Notes: generated by a model not told the origin, from the sequence alone. A stretch of DNA of 63,011 nt, filler included, from Octopus bimaculoides (GCF_001194135.2; 6 parts of 5 records of this genome joined end to end with filler, not necessarily neighbours in it); one strand, 5' to 3'; positions 35,265-46,433 are shown, counted from the first letter of the whole stretch. Made by a program: numbers and translations.

Positions 35265-35337
35265 CGAGCTTGCCAGGATTCGAACCTGGAATCTTCTGAT
35301 CCGTAGTCAGACGCGTTATCCATTGCGCCACAAGCCC
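35265..35337 (-). tRNA. trnR-ACG: tRNA-Arg(ACG), intact
   Basis: GGGCTTGTGGCGCAATGGATAACGCGTCTGACTACGGATCAGAAGATTCCAGGTTCGAATCCTGGCAAGCTCG; 73 nt, full cloverleaf, T4 terminator downstream. Confidence 0.96.
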
Positions 35338-35511
35338 TCGATGAGATAAACGTCGTTACATATGTTCTAATTTCTTTACTGACTAGCTGTTGCTGTTGAC
35401 ATACTAAGACATACAAATGGCTGCGTGCGCACAAACGCACACATGATTATTTGAATTTCTGGAATGCACCAATAAAGAATTATCAGCGCCACTTCCCCGG
35501 ATGTGTCTGAA

Positions 35512-35584
35512 ACAATTTACCCGGTTTCAAACCGAAGACCTTCTGACCCGTAAGCAAATGCATTATCCATCGCACCACAGGGCC
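35512..35584 (-). pseudogene. tRNA-Arg pseudogene
   Basis: Diverged, colinear with the intact gene. Confidence 0.75.
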
Positions 35585-35891
35585 TCGCGTAGTCCGTAGC
35601 AGATGTTTGTGCAGTAATTTCTTAACTAACTTTCATTGACTGTCAAAGACAGAAACCCACATGTACATACGTATGCATGTACATACGTATAAATCATGAA
35701 CATTTATGCTTTTATTCTTTTACTTGTTTCAGTCATTAGAGCACCGCATTTAGTCGAACAAATGGACCACAGGAGTTATTCTTTGTAAGCCTAGTACTTA
35801 TTCTATCGTTGACTAAGGCGAACCGCTAAGTTACACCCAACATCGGTTGTGAAGCAACGGTGGTGGGGGGGGGACAAACACAGCCATACAA

Positions 35892-35930
<39 letters not shown>

Positions 35931-36966
35931 NNNNNNNNNNNNNNNNNNNNNNNNNNNNNNNNNNNNNNNNNNNNNNNNNNNNNNNNNNNNNNNNNNNNNN
36001 NNNNNNNNNNNNNNNNNNNNNNNNNNNNNNNNNNNNNNNNNNNNNNNNNNNNNNNNNNNNNNNNNNNNNNNNNNNNNNNNNNNNNNNNNNNNNNNNNNNN
36101 NNNNNNNNNNNNNNNNNNNNNNNNNNNNNNNNNNNNNNNNNNNNNNNNNNNNNNNNNNNNNNNNNNNNNNNNNNNNNNNNNNNNNNNNNNNNNNNNNNNN
36201 NNNNNNNNNNNNNNNNNNNNNNNNNNNNNNNNNNNNNNNNNNNNNNNNNNNNNNNNNNNNNNNNNNNNNNNNNNNNNNNNNNNNNNNNNNNNNNNNNNNN
36301 NNNNNNNNNNNNNNNNNNNNNNNNNNNNNNNNNNNNNNNNNNNNNNNNNNNNNNNNNNNNNNNNNNNNNNNNNNNNNNNNNNNNNNNNNNNNNNNNNNNN
36401 NNNNNNNNNNNNNNNNNNNNNNNNNNNNNNNNNNNNNNNNNNNNNNNNNNNNNNNNNNNNNNNNNNNNNNNNNNNNNNNNNNNNNNNNNNNNNNNNNNNN
36501 NNNNNNNNNNNNNNNNNNNNNNNNNNNNNNNNNNNNNNNNNNNNNNNNNNNNNNNNNNNNNNNNNATATATATAATGCGTTTGCTTGCGGGTCAGAAGGT
36601 TTTCGGTTTGAAACCGGGTAAATTCGGATGCATTTTGTTTCAGACACACCCGGGGAAGTGGCGCTGATAATTCTTTATTGGTGCATTTCAGAAATATCCT
36701 GGAGAATATTATTTTTCTTTGTGGTTGGGTCGTTGATGACATCTTTCTAGCATATTGGATGTCACCTAGTGAGAGAGACGACGGGCTTCTTTCAGTTTCT
36801 GTCTACTAAATCCACTCGCAAGGCTTTGGTTTGCAGTGGGACTGAACTTGAAACTATGTGGTTGAGAAGCAAGCGCTTATAAATTTCAGGAAACCCACAT
36901 CAAAAGTATTCATTACACCCACCACTCATACTTCCCAAATGTTTCCGAAATAAAACGATATGAATA

Positions 36967-37040
36967 CGAGCTTGCTAGGAATTCGAACTTCGATTATCCT
37001 AATTCGTAGACAGTTGCATTAGCCATTGCACCACAAGCCT
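36967..37040 (-). pseudogene. tRNA-Arg pseudogene
   Basis: CGAGCTTGCTAGGAATTCGAAC...CCATTGCACCACAAGCC. Confidence 0.8.
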
Positions 37041-38715
37041 TGAGGTGAGGTAATCTACCTACTTATCTACTAATTTCTTTACTAAATCCTGTTGCGCAGA
37101 GGCAAAGGTACAGACACCTTTACGTACACCTTTACAAGTGCACACAAGCACACATACACACACACATACACTGACACACACATGCACACAAGCACACACA
37201 CATACACTGACGCACACATGCACACACACGCACACACACACACACACACATGCACACACGCACACATGATTATATAAATTGCTGAAATACATAAAGAAAA
37301 AACTTAGCACCACTTACCCCGATGTTTCTGAAATAAAATGCACGTGATTTCTCCAGGATTCGAACCTGGAATCTTTTGACCCATAATTCGTTGCTTCACA
37401 CGACATCGCATAGTCAATAATCAANNNNNNNNNNNNNNNNNNNNNNNNNNNNNNNNNNNNNNNNNNNNNNNNNNNNNNNNNNNNNNNNNNNNNNNNNNNN
37501 NNNNNNNNNNNNNNNNNNNNNNNNNNNNNNNNNNNNNNNNNNNNNNNNNNNNNNNNNNNNNNNNNNNNNNNNNNNNNNNNNNNNNNNNNNNNNNNNNNNN
37601 NNNNNNNNNNNNNNNNNNNNNNNNNNNNNNNNNNNNNNNNNNNNNNNNNNNNNNNNNNNNNNNNNNNNNNNNNNNNNNNNNNNNNNNNNNNNNNNNNNNN
37701 NNNNNNNNNNNNNNNNNNNNNNNNNNNNNNNNNNNNNNNNNNNNNNNNNNNNNNNNNNNNNNNNNNNNNNNNNNNNNNNNNNNNNNNNNNNNNNNNNNNN
37801 NNNNNNNNNNNNNNNNNNNNNNNNNNNNNNNNNNNNNNNNNNNNNNNNNNNNNNNNNNNNNNNNNNNNNNNNNNNNNNNNNNNNNNNNNNNNNNNNNNNN
37901 NNNNNNNNNNNNNNNNNNNNNNNNNNNNNNNNNNNNNNNNNNNNNNNNNNNNNNNNNNNNNNNNNNNNNNNNNNNNNNNNNNNNNNNNNNNNNNNNNNNN
38001 NNNNNNNNNNNNNNNNNNNNNNNNNNNNNNNNNNNNNNNNNNNNNNNNNNNNNNNNNNNNNNNNNNNNNNNNNNNNNNNNNNNNNNNNNNNNNNNNNNNN
38101 NNNNNNNNNNNNNNNNNNNNNNNNNNNNNNNNNNNNNNNNNNNNNNNNNNNNNNNNNNNNNNNNNNNNNNNNNNNNNNNNNNNNNNNNNNNNNNNNNNNN
38201 NNNNNNNNNNNNNNNNNNNNNNNNNNNNNNNNNNNNNNNNNNNNNNNNNNNNNNNNNNNNNNNNNNNNNNNNNNNNNNNNNNNNNNNNNNNNNNNNNNNN
38301 NNNNNNNNNNNNNNNNNNNNNNNNNNNNNNNNNNCAGTAAATTTTTTTTTCTATTTTGAAAAATTGAAATTTTACAATTTTTCTCAGGATCATAATCTCC
38401 GTATTTTTCTAAGTATTTAGCAAAAAAAAATTTCCGAATAAAATGAAGAAATGAAGAAATTGGGGGATGGAGGGGTGGTTTAAATTTTTTAAAGTTGCGA
38501 TTTTTTGAAATTTTTTTTTTTTGTTCTTTCTCAGAGTTGGAATCTCCATAGCCGAAAACATGGGATTCCGTGAAACAACAACATTTTTTAAGGATGGCGG
38601 GGGGGGGGGCATTTACGACTCGACCATGTGCGCCTAATCACGAATGTATGCTTTAATTTCTAAAATGCTTCGTCTAAAATATTCATTAGCACTATTTACA
38701 GAAATAAAATGAAAA

Positions 38716-38788
38716 CGAGATTGCCAACATTCGAACATGCAATCTTCTGATCCGTAATCAAACGCGTAATTCATTGAATTACAAGCCC
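38716..38788 (-). pseudogene. tRNA-Arg pseudogene (monomer B)
   Basis: TTGCCAACATTCGAACATGCAATCTTCTGATCCGTAATC. Confidence 0.8.
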
Positions 38789-38996
38789 TCACGCTCTTAA
38801 CCGTTACTGCTTGCGCGCTGATCTCTTTACTAACCTCTATTCACTGTCAAAGACACAGATATGCGCGCACGCTGACACACACGTAATTAACGTGACACAT
38901 ATAATTATGAATATATGCTTTAATTTTTAAAATGTATAGTGTAAAATGTTCATTAGCACGACCTTATCTCCAAATGTTACCGAAATAAAATGAATA

Positions 38997-39069
38997 CGAG
39001 CTTGCCAGGATTTGAACCTGGAATCTTCTGATCCGTAGTCAGACGCGTTATCCATTGCGCCACAAGCCA
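38997..39069 (-). tRNA. trnR-ACG: tRNA-Arg(ACG), near-intact (G1>U, G57>A)
   Basis: 71/73 identical to the 35265 copy. Confidence 0.8.
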
Positions 39070-44915: not shown

Positions 44916-45134
44916 TCATGGTGATATGCGTCTATACTTATCTCCTAATTCCTTTACTGATTAATGCCTGGTGTGGACAAACTTACAGATATACTTGCGG
45001 GTACACACAGAGACGGGCCGCGCACACACACACATTCACACGATTATATGAATTTCAGAAAGTCACCAATAAAATTATTATTAGCACCACTTTCCCCCAT
45101 GTTTCTGAAATAAAATTCACCCGATTATGCCAGC

Positions 45135-45322
45135 TGGAACACCGCAACTAGTGGAACAAATCGACCCCAGGACTTATTCTTTGTAAGCCCAGTACTTAGT
45201 CTATTGATATCTTTTCCCGAATCGCTAAGTTACGGAAACGTAAGCACACCAACATCGGTTGTCAAGCGATGGGGTGAGGGACAAAGACAGATGCACACAC
45301 ACACAAATACACACACACACAA

Positions 45323-45410
<88 letters not shown>

Positions 45411-45790
45411 AAACACATAAATATATGAAAGTAAACAAATTTGCTTTCGAAGTGTTGAGATGTCTAGAAAGTTAAGGAAGTAATTTTTATTCTCAAACGC
45501 AGGATAATGCTAATAATATAAGCATGCACTACCCATAGTTTGCAGAATATGGGTAATTTATCCTGTTCATACTATATTATTAGCATTATCCTGCGTTTGA
45601 GAATAAATATTATTTACATATATATACGACGGGCTTCTTTCAGTTTCCATCTACCAAATCCACTCACAAGGCTTTGGTCGGCCCGAGGCTATAACAGAAG
45701 ACACTTGCCCAAGGTGTCATTCAATGAGACTGAACCCGGATCCATGTGGTTGGTAAGCAAGCTACTTACCACACAGTCATTCCTCCGCCT
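45135..45790 (-). mobile_element. SINE family B pieces (3' half 45135-45300, 5' half 45625-45790)
   Basis: Matches family B; interrupts the tRNA higher-order repeat. Confidence 0.75.
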
Positions 45791-45876
45791 ATTGGTGATT
45801 ATATAATTTTCTAAAATACCCAAACAAAAATATTATTAGCACCACTTTCCCCGATGTTCCTGAAATAAAATGCGCC

Positions 45877-45946
45877 CGATTTTGCTAGAGTTCGAGCCTG
45901 GAATCTGATCTACAATTAGACGCGTTATTCATTGCCCCACAGGGTC
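45877..45946 (-). pseudogene. tRNA-Arg pseudogene (monomer E)
   Basis: TTAGACGCGTTATTCATTGCCCCACAGGG. Confidence 0.72.
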
Positions 45947-46122
45947 TGGCATAGTCAATAGTTGATTCTTTATGAAGGAATTCTTTTATTTACATTACCT
46001 GTCAGAGACAGGCTCACACGAATATACGTACAATCATGAATATATGCTGTCATTTCTAAAATGCATCATCTAAAACAATCATTAGTACTACTTACCCAAA
46101 TGTTTCAGAAATAAAGTGAATG

Positions 46123-46195
46123 TGAGTTTGCCAGGATTCGAACTCAGATACTCCTGTCTCGTAGGCAAACGTACAATCCATTGCGCTATTAGCAG
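46123..46195 (-). pseudogene. tRNA-Arg pseudogene (monomer F)
   Basis: TTTGCCAGGATTCGAACTCAG. Confidence 0.7.
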
Positions 46196-46360
46196 TTACT
46201 ACTTACAGATTATAACTTATGTATTTACTGTCGACAACACAGATATGCACACACGCTGAAACACTCATACACAATCATAAACAGATGCATAAATTTCAGA
46301 AATACATCATCTAAAATAGTCATTATTCCCAGTTCCAATGTTAGCGAAATAAAAGTAATA

Positions 46361-46433
46361 CGAGCTTGCCAGGATTCGAACCTGGAATCTTCTGATCCGT
46401 AGTCAGACGCGTTATCCATTGCGCCACAAGCCA
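46361..46433 (-). tRNA. trnR-ACG: tRNA-Arg(ACG), near-intact (G1>U)
   Basis: 72/73 identical. Confidence 0.85.

What the first reader, a model, noticed from the sequence alone, without database searches (positions are those of the whole stretch)
35265..46433. tRNA-Arg(ACG) higher-order repeat in which only two of eight monomer positions stay alive
Seen: ~250-bp monomers, each with a tRNA core, recur in the order B-C-D-(I)-E-F-G-H. B: 38716, 40446, 43245. C: 38997, 40702, 43546. E: 39458, 41618, 44370, 45877. F: 39732, 41892, 44644, 46123. G: 39951, 42400, 44843, 46361. C and G copies are 71-73/73 identical to each other although their flanks are clearly diverged; B, D, E, F, H and I carry position-specific lesions shared between cycles. 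Inference: monomer amplification, decay of six positions, block duplication, then purifying selection or gene conversion confined to two slots. This is a satellite-like architecture built from a Pol III gene.
Basis: partly seen in the sequence, partly recalled or inferred. Interest (0 to 1): 0.75.

Follow-up and report, generated by a model that had tools for sequence, protein, structure and literature searches.

The report
Decaying tandem tRNA-Arg gene cluster
This is a cluster of about 30 head-to-tail copies of one arginine tRNA gene, copied in blocks, in which eight copies stay nearly perfect because they are still needed and the rest are decaying pseudogenes; it is a tidy example of something already known.

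Summary
In the gap-free stretch 38635-46482 they recur in the order B-C-D-(I)-E-F-G-H, in three to four imperfect cycles of 1.5-2.8 kb.

Eight units score as genes (Rfam 54-64 bits). Their cores are 70-73/73 identical while the flanks differ by 10-50%. Identity falls from 0.98 to 0.40 exactly at the 5' end of the tRNA.

Slots B, D, E, F and H share lesions between cycles, so they died before the block was copied. Slot I does not (1 shared, 23 private), and unit X3 is a dead G-type duplicate, so decay continued after the copying.

The same 73-mer occurs in 11 unrelated metagenome contexts. Purifying selection on the mature tRNA is therefore the main cause of the identity. A 41/42-nt leader patch shared by C3 and G4 shows occasional ectopic exchange as well.

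This is birth-and-death evolution of a tandem tRNA gene cluster, a known kind. "Satellite-like" overstates it: the cycles are only 72-86% alike, vary in composition, and are interrupted by an inversion and dispersed repeats. I found no sign that the dead units are under constraint. The assembly and expression could not be tested.

The parts
38635..46482 (-). Gap-free tandem array of tRNA-Arg(ACG)-derived monomers (about 200-300 bp each), in three to four imperfect multi-monomer cycles.
   Evidence: nhmmer units; self-BLAST blocks 72-86% identical; array sequence resumes at 38635 to the right of gap 2; the array ends upstream of 46433 in a GT/CA-rich run.
35265..35337 (-). Intact tRNA-Arg(ACG) gene a0, 73/73 identical to G1 and G2. 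Separated from the main array by two assembly gaps.
   Evidence: 62.8 bits; 0 broken pairs; TTTT at +7.
38997..39069 (-). Gene C1. Two changes: G1>T (a U1.C72 mismatch) and G57>A.
   Evidence: (53.9 bits).
39951..40023 (-). Gene G1, canonical sequence.
   Evidence: (62.8 bits).
40702..40774 (-). Gene C2. C66>T gives a G7.U66 pair. The first run of four or more T is only at +23.
   Evidence: (59.4 bits).
42400..42472 (-). Gene G2, canonical sequence.
   Evidence: (62.8 bits).
43546..43618 (-). Gene C3. Discriminator base changed, G73>A.
   Evidence: (64.2 bits).
44843..44915 (-). Gene G3. T47>G in the variable loop.
   Evidence: (62.9 bits).
46361..46433 (-). Gene G4. G1>T, the same change as in C1. 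The last unit of the array, with mosaic flanks.
   Evidence: (53.9 bits).
38716..38788 (-). Slot B pseudogene of cycle 1. The other B copies are at 40446-40503 (15-nt deletion) and 43245-43317.
   Evidence: Shared T-arm lesion TGTTGG; 5 derived states shared by all copies; flank clade 100%.
39252..39324 (-). Slot D pseudogene of cycle 1. The other copy is at 43872-43944; ARAGORN calls it a tRNA, but Rfam gives 22.7 bits (below 29) and 6 of 20 pairs are broken.
   Evidence: 6 shared lesions.
39458..39530 (-). Slot E pseudogene of cycle 1. The other copies are at 41618-41690, 44370-44442 and 45877-45946.
   Evidence: Flank clade 100%, core clade 94%; 7 lesions shared by all copies; core identity about equal to flank identity.
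39732..39804 (-). Slot F pseudogene of cycle 1. The other copies are at 41892-41964, 44644-44716 and 46123-46195.
   Evidence: Core clade 81%; 8 lesions shared by all copies.
40211..40271 (-). Slot H pseudogene of cycle 1, with a 12-nt deletion. The other copy is at 42692-42752 and has the same deletion.
   Evidence: 18 shared states; core clade 99%.
41336..41408 (-). Slot I pseudogene of cycle 2: anticodon ATG, and A14, G18 and A58 lost. The other copy is at 44080-44152 (anticodon GTG). The two decayed independently.
   Evidence: 33.6 and 19.2 bits; 1 shared against 23 private.
43087..43150 (-). X3: a dead extra copy of the G-type gene, with a 9-nt deletion.
   Evidence: 42222-42473 matches 42902-43151 at 84%; its downstream spacer is 88-91% identical to the F-G spacers.
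41132..41298 (+). Inverted B-like monomer (tRNA-like core at 41212-41279 on the plus strand) that interrupts cycle 2.
   Evidence: 38703-38865 matches 41294-41132 at 86%; nhmmer plus-strand hit.
43626..43667 (-). Leader patch upstream of C3 (-50 to -8), 41/42 identical to the G4 leader at 46441-46482. It is inserted after C3's own C-type leader.
   Evidence: (97.6% over 42 nt).
45120..45800 (+). SINE-like dispersed repeat containing a (CA)62 run. It sits where slot H of cycle 3 should be.
35512..37417 (-). Outlying decayed units: b0 at 35512-35584, c0 at 36967-37040, d0 at 37345-37417, and an inverted b0-like copy at 36570-36625 on the plus strand. Their placement depends on scaffolding across the gaps.

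Best explanation
The locus is a nuclear, metazoan-type cluster of tRNA-Arg(ACG) genes and pseudogenes that grew by tandem duplication.

A unit of about 250 bp (upstream AGTAAAGAAATTAG motif, 73-bp gene, TTTT terminator, spacer) was amplified head to tail. Several copies then lost function. Later, blocks of several monomers were copied again by unequal exchange. This produced three to four imperfect cycles that have since diverged by about 10-25% at unconstrained sites.

Throughout, copies that still supply tRNA have been held to the canonical 73-nt sequence by purifying selection on the mature tRNA, its internal A and B boxes and its terminator. Copies that had already died, or died later (slot I, X3), drift at the same rate as the spacers. 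Occasional ectopic exchange between live copies adds some mosaicism.

Shown here: the architecture, the shared and private lesions, the contrast between core and flank, and the conservation of the 73-mer elsewhere. Inferred: that the eight good copies are transcribed and used, that unequal crossing-over made the blocks, and that the dead copies have no function.
For: - Units, scores and coordinates.
- Canonical cloverleaf. Six copies have 0 of 20 stem pairs broken and two have 1. All have anticodon ACG. The A box is TGGCGCAATGG and the B box GGTTCGAATCC. TTTT lies at +7 in 7 of 8 copies.
- Grouping of monomers by slot, from flanks alone.
- Dead slots have core identity about equal to flank identity (p>0.05 for most pairs). 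Live pairs have 96-100% core identity against 45-87% in the flanks.
- Variable columns within a slot: 6/146 in live slots against 131/426 in dead ones, p=6e-13.
- Among the eight live copies, anchored identity is 0.40 at -10 to -1, 0.98 in the core (68/73 columns invariant) and 0.74 at +1 to +10.
- Live-copy substitutions fall at positions 1, 47, 57 (purine to purine), 66 (G.U) and 73.
- The exact core occurs in 13 metagenome contigs, which make 11 unrelated flanking contexts. None aligns to the window beyond the terminator.
- Lesions shared by all copies of a slot: B 5, D 6, E 7, F 8, H 18. Slot I: 1 shared and 23 private.
- X3 is a dead G-type duplicate.
Against: - No expression, Pol III occupancy or read-level evidence could be obtained.
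- Eight or more redundant copies should each be under weak selection, so selection alone is an incomplete account of near-perfect identity.
- T1 shared by the non-adjacent copies C1 and G4 (chance about 0.07) and the 41/42-nt leader patch show that sequence exchange does occur.
- C1 and G4 carry a U1.C72 mismatch, and C2 lacks a nearby T4 terminator. The true number of working genes may be five or six.
- tRNAscan-SE isotype scores were not available.
Confidence: 0.8

Rival explanations
1. Concerted evolution. The eight good cores are kept identical mainly by repeated gene conversion among themselves or from a master gene, not by selection on each copy.
For: C1 and G4 lie 7.4 kb apart in different slots but share the G1>T change (chance about 0.07). 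The C3 leader carries a 41/42-nt patch of the G4 leader while their other flanks are about 30% diverged. G4 has a C-like proximal trailer in a G-type spacer.
Against: Conversion tracts would not stop at the same nucleotide in all eight copies, yet identity falls from 0.98 to 0.40 exactly at position 1. The C3/G4 patch ends at -8 and does not include the gene. Dead neighbours 200 bp away are never repaired. The identical 73-mer exists in 11 unrelated contexts with no alignable flanks, where local conversion cannot be the cause.
Confidence: 0.12
2. Assembly artefact. The periodicity or the cycles come from mis-joined or duplicated repeat contigs.
For: The piece has three N gaps. Gap 1 is flanked by an inverted duplicate of one monomer (35455-35566 against 36695-36572, 86%), a pattern that scaffolding errors can produce. 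No reads could be laid on the sequence.
Against: All four cycles lie in one stretch without N, 38335-53867. The cycles differ by 14-28% and have private indels, inserts and an inversion. Assemblers mis-join near-identical repeats and do not invent diverged ones.
Confidence: 0.03
3. Exapted spacers. The dead monomers are retained because they still bind TFIIIC or Pol III (boundary or ETC-like sites) or give rise to small RNAs, and the block structure is itself under selection.
For: Many dead units keep a recognisable B box (0-3 mismatches in most), a TTTT run at about +7 and the upstream motif. Among dead units, identity to the live consensus is highest in the T loop (0.88).
Against: Within slots, B-box columns vary about as much as the rest of the core (0.23 against 0.30, p=0.29), and A-box columns vary more (0.43). 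Dead cores diverge as fast as the flanks or faster. Slot composition differs between cycles.
Confidence: 0.05

Closest known systems
Tandem tRNA gene clusters of eukaryotes. Examples: the Arabidopsis chr1 Ser-Tyr-Tyr cluster and the 0.4-kb tRNA-Cys cluster with a flanking pseudogene (PMC10701932, PMC12308677); the human 1q23.3 tRNA VNTR (PMC4041453); the Entamoeba arrays (PMC2652664); the clusters of tRNA genes and pseudogenes surveyed across eukaryotes (PMC2888827); and, from my own knowledge, the Xenopus 3.18-kb eight-tRNA repeat.
   Same: Head-to-tail repeat units that each carry a Pol III tRNA gene. Copy number changes by whole units. Repeat units are 80-95% alike while the genes are conserved. 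Pseudogenes occur inside or beside the clusters, and transposable elements are embedded in them.
   Different: Here there is a single isoacceptor. About three quarters of the units are pseudogenes. The pseudogenes occupy fixed places in a block of 7-8 monomers that was itself copied. The mixed arrays fetched here that carry the same Arg gene (L001-L013) have all their genes intact.
Birth-and-death evolution of tandem multigene families, as discussed for 5S rDNA arrays and their higher-order organisation (PMC5437419).
   Same: Duplication, long-term retention of some copies under purifying selection, decay of others into pseudogenes, and spacers far more diverged than genes.
   Different: The Esox 5S arrays are very large, recent and almost free of pseudogenes. 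This array is small, old and mostly pseudogenes.
Tandem repeats or satellites derived from tRNA: newt PolIII/TAN (tRNA-Glu-like, about 360 nt), Xenopus OAX/satellite I and Rana/PolIII (PMC10702118, PMC12054243).
   Same: A tandem repeat of a few hundred bp whose unit contains a tRNA-related Pol III promoter.
   Different: As described in the sources read, those are repetitive families containing a tRNA-related sequence; that their units do not include working tRNA genes is from my own knowledge. Here working-looking genes persist among the repeats, there are only about 30 units, and the cycles are not homogenised.
Higher-order repeats of the alpha-satellite type.
   Same: Monomers that cluster by their position in a multi-monomer unit.
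   Different: In true higher-order repeats the copies of the large unit are 95-100% identical while the monomers within it are 60-80% alike. Here the copies of the large unit are only 72-86% identical, number three to four, and differ in length and content.

Membership tests
Functional eukaryotic nuclear tRNA-Arg(ACG) gene (Pol III type 2) | Cloverleaf with paired stems, and a score above the tRNA family threshold. | tested here: met
   Eight copies score 53.9-64.2 bits against a gathering score of 29. Of 20 stem pairs, 0 are broken in a0, G1, G2, C2, C3 and G3, and 1 is broken (U1.C72) in C1 and G4.
Functional eukaryotic nuclear tRNA-Arg(ACG) gene (Pol III type 2) | Anticodon ACG, with C35/G36 and A20 as the arginine identity nucleotides. 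| tested here: met
   ARAGORN reports anticodon acg in all eight. The D loop AATGGATAA carries the A at position 20 (sequence; the assignment of identity elements is from established knowledge).
Functional eukaryotic nuclear tRNA-Arg(ACG) gene (Pol III type 2) | Internal A box (TRGCNNARTGG) and B box (GGTTCGANTCC), and a terminator of four or more T just downstream. | tested here: met
   TGGCGCAATGG at 8-18. GGTTCGAATCC at 52-62 is unchanged in 7 of 8; C1 has G57>A within it. TTTT lies at +7 in 7 of 8, and at +23 in C2.
Functional eukaryotic nuclear tRNA-Arg(ACG) gene (Pol III type 2) | The mature sequence is conserved beyond this locus. | tested here: met
   The exact core occurs in 13 metagenome contigs, which make 11 unrelated flanking contexts.
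Functional eukaryotic nuclear tRNA-Arg(ACG) gene (Pol III type 2) | Transcription, processing and aminoacylation. | not testable with these tools
Tandem tRNA gene cluster | Several tRNA genes or pseudogenes head to tail, less than 1 kb apart, in homologous repeat units. | tested here: met
   About 30 units on one strand at 200-300 bp spacing, with homologous leaders and trailers.
Satellite-type higher-order repeat | Copies of the multi-monomer unit are near-identical (over 95%) and much more alike than the monomers within a unit. | tested here: not met
   Block identities are 72-86%. Same-slot flank distances are 0.07-0.25.
Satellite-type higher-order repeat | A regular period and many homogenised copies. 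| tested here: not met
   Same-slot offsets range from 1479 to 2844 bp. There are three to four cycles of differing content, an inversion and dispersed-repeat inserts.
Satellite-type higher-order repeat | Monomers cluster by their position in the unit. | tested here: met
   Clear for B, E, F, H and G2/G3. Weak for the C copies and for G1/G4.
tRNA-derived SINE | A tRNA-like head followed by a body and tail unrelated to tRNA, with copies dispersed through the genome. | tested here: not met
   The units are tandem and share homologous leaders and trailers. None has a tail. A different, dispersed SINE-like element is present in the piece.

The most novel reading that the evidence does not exclude
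The fixed pattern of one live gene separated by two to four dead monomers may not be a passive relic. The dead units would keep enough of the B box and terminator to hold TFIIIC or Pol III. They would then act as spacers or boundary elements, or as sources of small RNA, that set how the live tRNA-Arg genes are expressed, so that the block structure is itself under selection.
Probability: 0.04. Interest if true: 0.6.

Novelty: new member of a known kind. Interest (0 to 1): 0.3.

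Why it matters
The locus is a clean small-scale record of how tRNA gene families turn over. A single 8-kb stretch shows three things together:
- copies that died before a block duplication;
- copies that died after it;
- copies held at 0-3 differences in 73 nt while neutral sequence around them changed by 10-25%.

Every live copy has a unique leader and trailer, so the locus could be used to measure the expression of each tRNA gene copy separately. 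It could also be used to weigh selection against conversion in a redundant Pol III gene family. It adds no new principle.

Tried and rejected
- Public reads.
- Exact-product look-ups of two array ORFs (41341-41676 and 40093-40371, minus strand) found nothing.
- CpG-driven decay of the dead copies is rejected. Mismatch frequency is 0.21 at CpG sites against 0.24 elsewhere.
- Constraint on the B box in dead copies is rejected (0.23 against 0.30, p=0.29).
- Monomers as SINE insertions is rejected: they are tandem, have homologous flanks and have no tail.
- Protein-coding content. Every ORF of 70 aa or more is low-complexity or reads through tRNA units or N runs.
- Non-tRNA Rfam hits (mir-297, mir-3149, SCARNA7, Plastid-ycf2 and others) are far below their gathering scores. 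They sit on microsatellites or on the opposite strand of the tRNAs, so they are noise.
- A literature search for the SINE-like element's sequence found nothing. No paper on nuclear tRNA arrays in cephalopods was found.
- Reading a clean history of the cycles from slot-wise distances was abandoned. Different slots and different flanks give different nearest cycles, partly because of indels in the alignments.

Full report
**Scope and gaps.** The piece runs from 34968 to 55143 and holds three N runs: 35931-36565, 37425-38334 and 53868-54136. The first two fall inside the finding, so I tested them first. Gap 1 is bounded on the left by an (AT)n run inside a dispersed repeat. On the right it is bounded by an inverted copy of the b0 monomer (36572-36695 against 35566-35455, 86%). 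Gap 2 is bounded on the left by a monomer (d0) cut off at its 5' end, and on the right by 300 nt of A/T-rich sequence that is not array. Array-like sequence resumes at 38635. Neither gap can be bridged in register, and there is no reading frame to preserve. All the higher-order structure lies in one stretch without N (38335-53867), so it does not depend on the gaps. The relation of units 35265, 35512, 36967 and 37345 to the cycles does depend on them.

**The observation.**
- ARAGORN reports nine tRNA-Arg(ACG) genes, all on the minus strand.
- Rfam's tRNA model gives eight strong hits of 53.9-64.2 bits against a gathering score of 29. These are at 35265, 38997, 39951, 40702, 42400, 43546, 44843 and 46361. 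Weak hits lie at 41336 (33.6), 43872 (22.7) and 44080 (19.2).
- nhmmer with the 73-nt gene as query finds about 30 minus-strand units and two inverted ones.
- The core alignment shows lesions specific to each slot. B has the T-arm change to TGTTGG. E has ...CTCTAGCAAAATCGG. F has its own 5' half. H has a 12-nt deletion.

**Do monomers cluster by position?** An NJ tree built only from 80 nt of flank on each side, with the core excluded, gives these groups:
- B, 100% bootstrap
- E, 100%
- G2+G3, 100%
- F1/F3/F4 with D1, 100%
- E+H+b0, 91%

The core-only tree gives E 94%, F 81%, H 99% and B 74%. The live slots are less tidy. C1, C2 and C3 do not form a clade in the flank tree, although their B-C spacers are 81-82% alike and their C-D spacers 71-82% alike. 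G4 pairs weakly with C3.

**The cycles.** Self-BLAST shows blocks of 360-880 bp at 72-86% identity. The layout is:
- Cycle 1: B C D E F G H.
- Cycle 2: B C, a truncated D, an inverted B-like monomer at 41132-41298, then I E F G H, with a 173-nt dispersed-repeat insert in the F-G spacer.
- Cycle 3: X B C D I E F G, with H replaced by a SINE-like element carrying (CA)62 at 45120-45800.
- Cycle 4: only E F G.

Same-slot offsets range from 1479 to 2844 bp. These are a few old, imperfect block duplications, not a homogenised satellite.

**Live against dead.**
- Same-slot pairs in dead slots have core identity about equal to flank identity. For example, E cores are 84-89% identical against 78-94% in the flanks. 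Most pairs give p>0.05, with one B pair at p=0.02.
- Every pair of the eight good copies has 70-73/73 core identity against 45-87% in the flanks. The p-values run from 1e-4 for the closest pair, G2-G3, to 1e-17.
- Counting only changes since the blocks were copied, variable columns within a slot are 6/146 in C and G against 131/426 in the dead slots. The ratio is 0.13 and p=6e-13.
- In well-aligned flanks, same-slot distances are 0.07-0.25. Dead cores are at 0.10-0.36 and live cores at 0.00-0.04.

**Selection or conversion?** Four observations point to selection on the mature tRNA.
1. In an ungapped alignment anchored on the gene, mean pairwise identity among the eight copies is 0.40 at -10 to -1 and 0.98 in the core (68 of 73 columns invariant). 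It is 0.74 at +1 to +10, where the TTTT terminator sits. The edge of conservation coincides with the edge of the RNA in all eight copies, which conversion tracts would not do.
2. The five variable core positions are 1, 47 (variable loop), 57 (purine to purine), 66 (G-C to G.U) and 73 (discriminator). Four of the five are structurally tolerated.
3. Dead neighbours 200 bp away are never repaired.
4. A scan of public metagenome contigs with a 71-nt stretch of the core (positions 2-72) found 13 contigs, and the full 73-mer is present in each. These fall into 11 unrelated flanking contexts. None aligns to the window beyond the gene and about 10-28 nt around it. In those contigs the gene sits in tandem mixed tRNA arrays in which every gene is intact: Thr-Asn-Arg(TCG)-Arg(ACG), His-Arg-Cys, and Arg-Met. 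The same 73 nt are thus preserved where local conversion cannot be the cause.

Exchange between copies does happen, however. The C3 leader contains a 42-nt segment (43626-43667, -50 to -8) that is 41/42 identical to the G4 leader. It is inserted after C3's own C-type leader, while the other flanks of the two genes are about 30% diverged. C1 and G4 share G1>T, with a chance of about 0.07. G4 has a C-like proximal trailer inside a G-type spacer. I rate conversion as a secondary contributor.

**Order of events.** Derived states shared by all copies of a slot number 5 in B, 6 in D, 7 in E, 8 in F and 18 in H. These slots were therefore already damaged when the blocks were copied. Slot I has 1 shared state (C35>T at a CpG) against 23 private positions, and its two copies are 86% and 79% like the live gene. 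It was probably alive at duplication and died twice independently. X3 (43087-43150) is a later extra copy of the G-type gene whose downstream spacer is 88-91% identical to the F-G spacers. It is now dead through a 9-nt deletion. Decay is therefore continuing. 'Two live slots' is the current state of a birth-and-death process, not a designed arrangement.

**State of the good copies.** a0, G1 and G2 are identical. C2, C3 and G3 each carry one tolerated change. C1 and G4 have a U1.C72 mismatch at the top of the acceptor stem, and their scores drop to 53.9 bits. C2 has its first T4 run only at +23. The number of fully working genes may be five or six.

I2 passes Rfam's threshold, but it has anticodon ATG and has lost A14, G18 and A58. 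Its stems stay 'paired' only because C>T changes give G.U pairs.

**Do the dead units do anything?** Their T loop is the region closest to the live consensus (0.88). Many keep TTTT at about +7 and the upstream AGTAAAGAAATTAG-like motif. But within slots, B-box columns vary about as often as the rest of the core (0.23 against 0.30, p=0.29), and A-box columns vary more often (0.43). There is no excess decay at CpG sites. I see no evidence of constraint.

**Comparison with what is known.**
- Clusters of tRNA genes and pseudogenes are widespread, and tRNA pseudogene numbers scale steeply with genome size (PMC2888827).
- Tandem tRNA units of 0.4-7 kb are described in Arabidopsis (PMC10701932, PMC12308677), in humans (PMC4041453) and in Entamoeba (PMC2652664).
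- The birth-and-death framework and higher-order organisation have been applied to 5S arrays (PMC5437419).
- Tandem repeats built from tRNA-like Pol III units are known from newts and frogs (PMC10702118, PMC12054243).

This locus is another member of that kind. Its distinguishing points are a single isoacceptor, about 75% pseudogenes, and pseudogenes at fixed places in a block that was itself copied. It fails the defining tests of a satellite-type higher-order repeat, namely near-identical copies of the large unit and a regular period.

**What could not be done.** No reads, no expression data and no orthologous locus could be obtained, and the organism was not identified. No paper on nuclear tRNA arrays in cephalopods turned up.

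**Verdict.** It is a new member of a known kind, with interest 0.3.

Noticed in passing
L001-L013 (metagenome contigs): The identical 73-nt tRNA-Arg(ACG) lies in tandem arrays of mixed, intact tRNA genes. L001 has Thr(AGT)-Asn(GTT)-Arg(TCG)-Arg(ACG) in a unit of about 1.05 kb. L002, L003, L006 and L011 have His-Arg-Cys units of about 1 kb. L004, L005 and L013 have Arg and Met together. The source organisms are unknown.
   Followed up: partly
window 49100-49545 (+) and 50160-50605 (-); also 45120-45800, 35690-35930, 36778-36831: A dispersed SINE-like repeat with a tRNA-like head (A-box-like TGTGTGGTAAG and B-box-like GGTTCCGGGTTCAGTCCC on its sense strand) and an internal CA/TA microsatellite. 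Two copies, 92% identical, form an inverted pair around a (GTA)22 run at 49801-49867.
   Followed up: partly
window 41986-42158 and 52309-52472: A 170-nt repeat, 83% identical between its two copies. One copy is inserted in the F2-G2 spacer and stretches that spacer from about 146 to 435 nt.
   Followed up: no
window 35455-35566 and 36572-36695: Inverted copies of one decayed monomer (86% identical) on either side of assembly gap 1. This could be a real palindromic duplication or a scaffolding artefact.
   Followed up: no
window 41336-41408: Pseudogene I2 scores above Rfam's tRNA threshold (33.6 bits) with anticodon ATG. Annotation pipelines could call it a tRNA-His-like gene, although it has lost A14, G18 and A58.
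   Followed up: yes
window, -45 to -22 upstream of each live gene (for example 40046-40068 for G1): The leader motif AGTAAAGAAATTAG(A/G)A.ATA(T/A)GT is better conserved among the live copies than the last 20 nt before the gene. It may be an upstream, TATA-like promoter element.
   Followed up: partly
window 38335-38634: 300 nt of A/T-rich sequence with poly-T and poly-G runs and no array homology, directly to the right of gap 2. Its origin is unknown.
   Followed up: no
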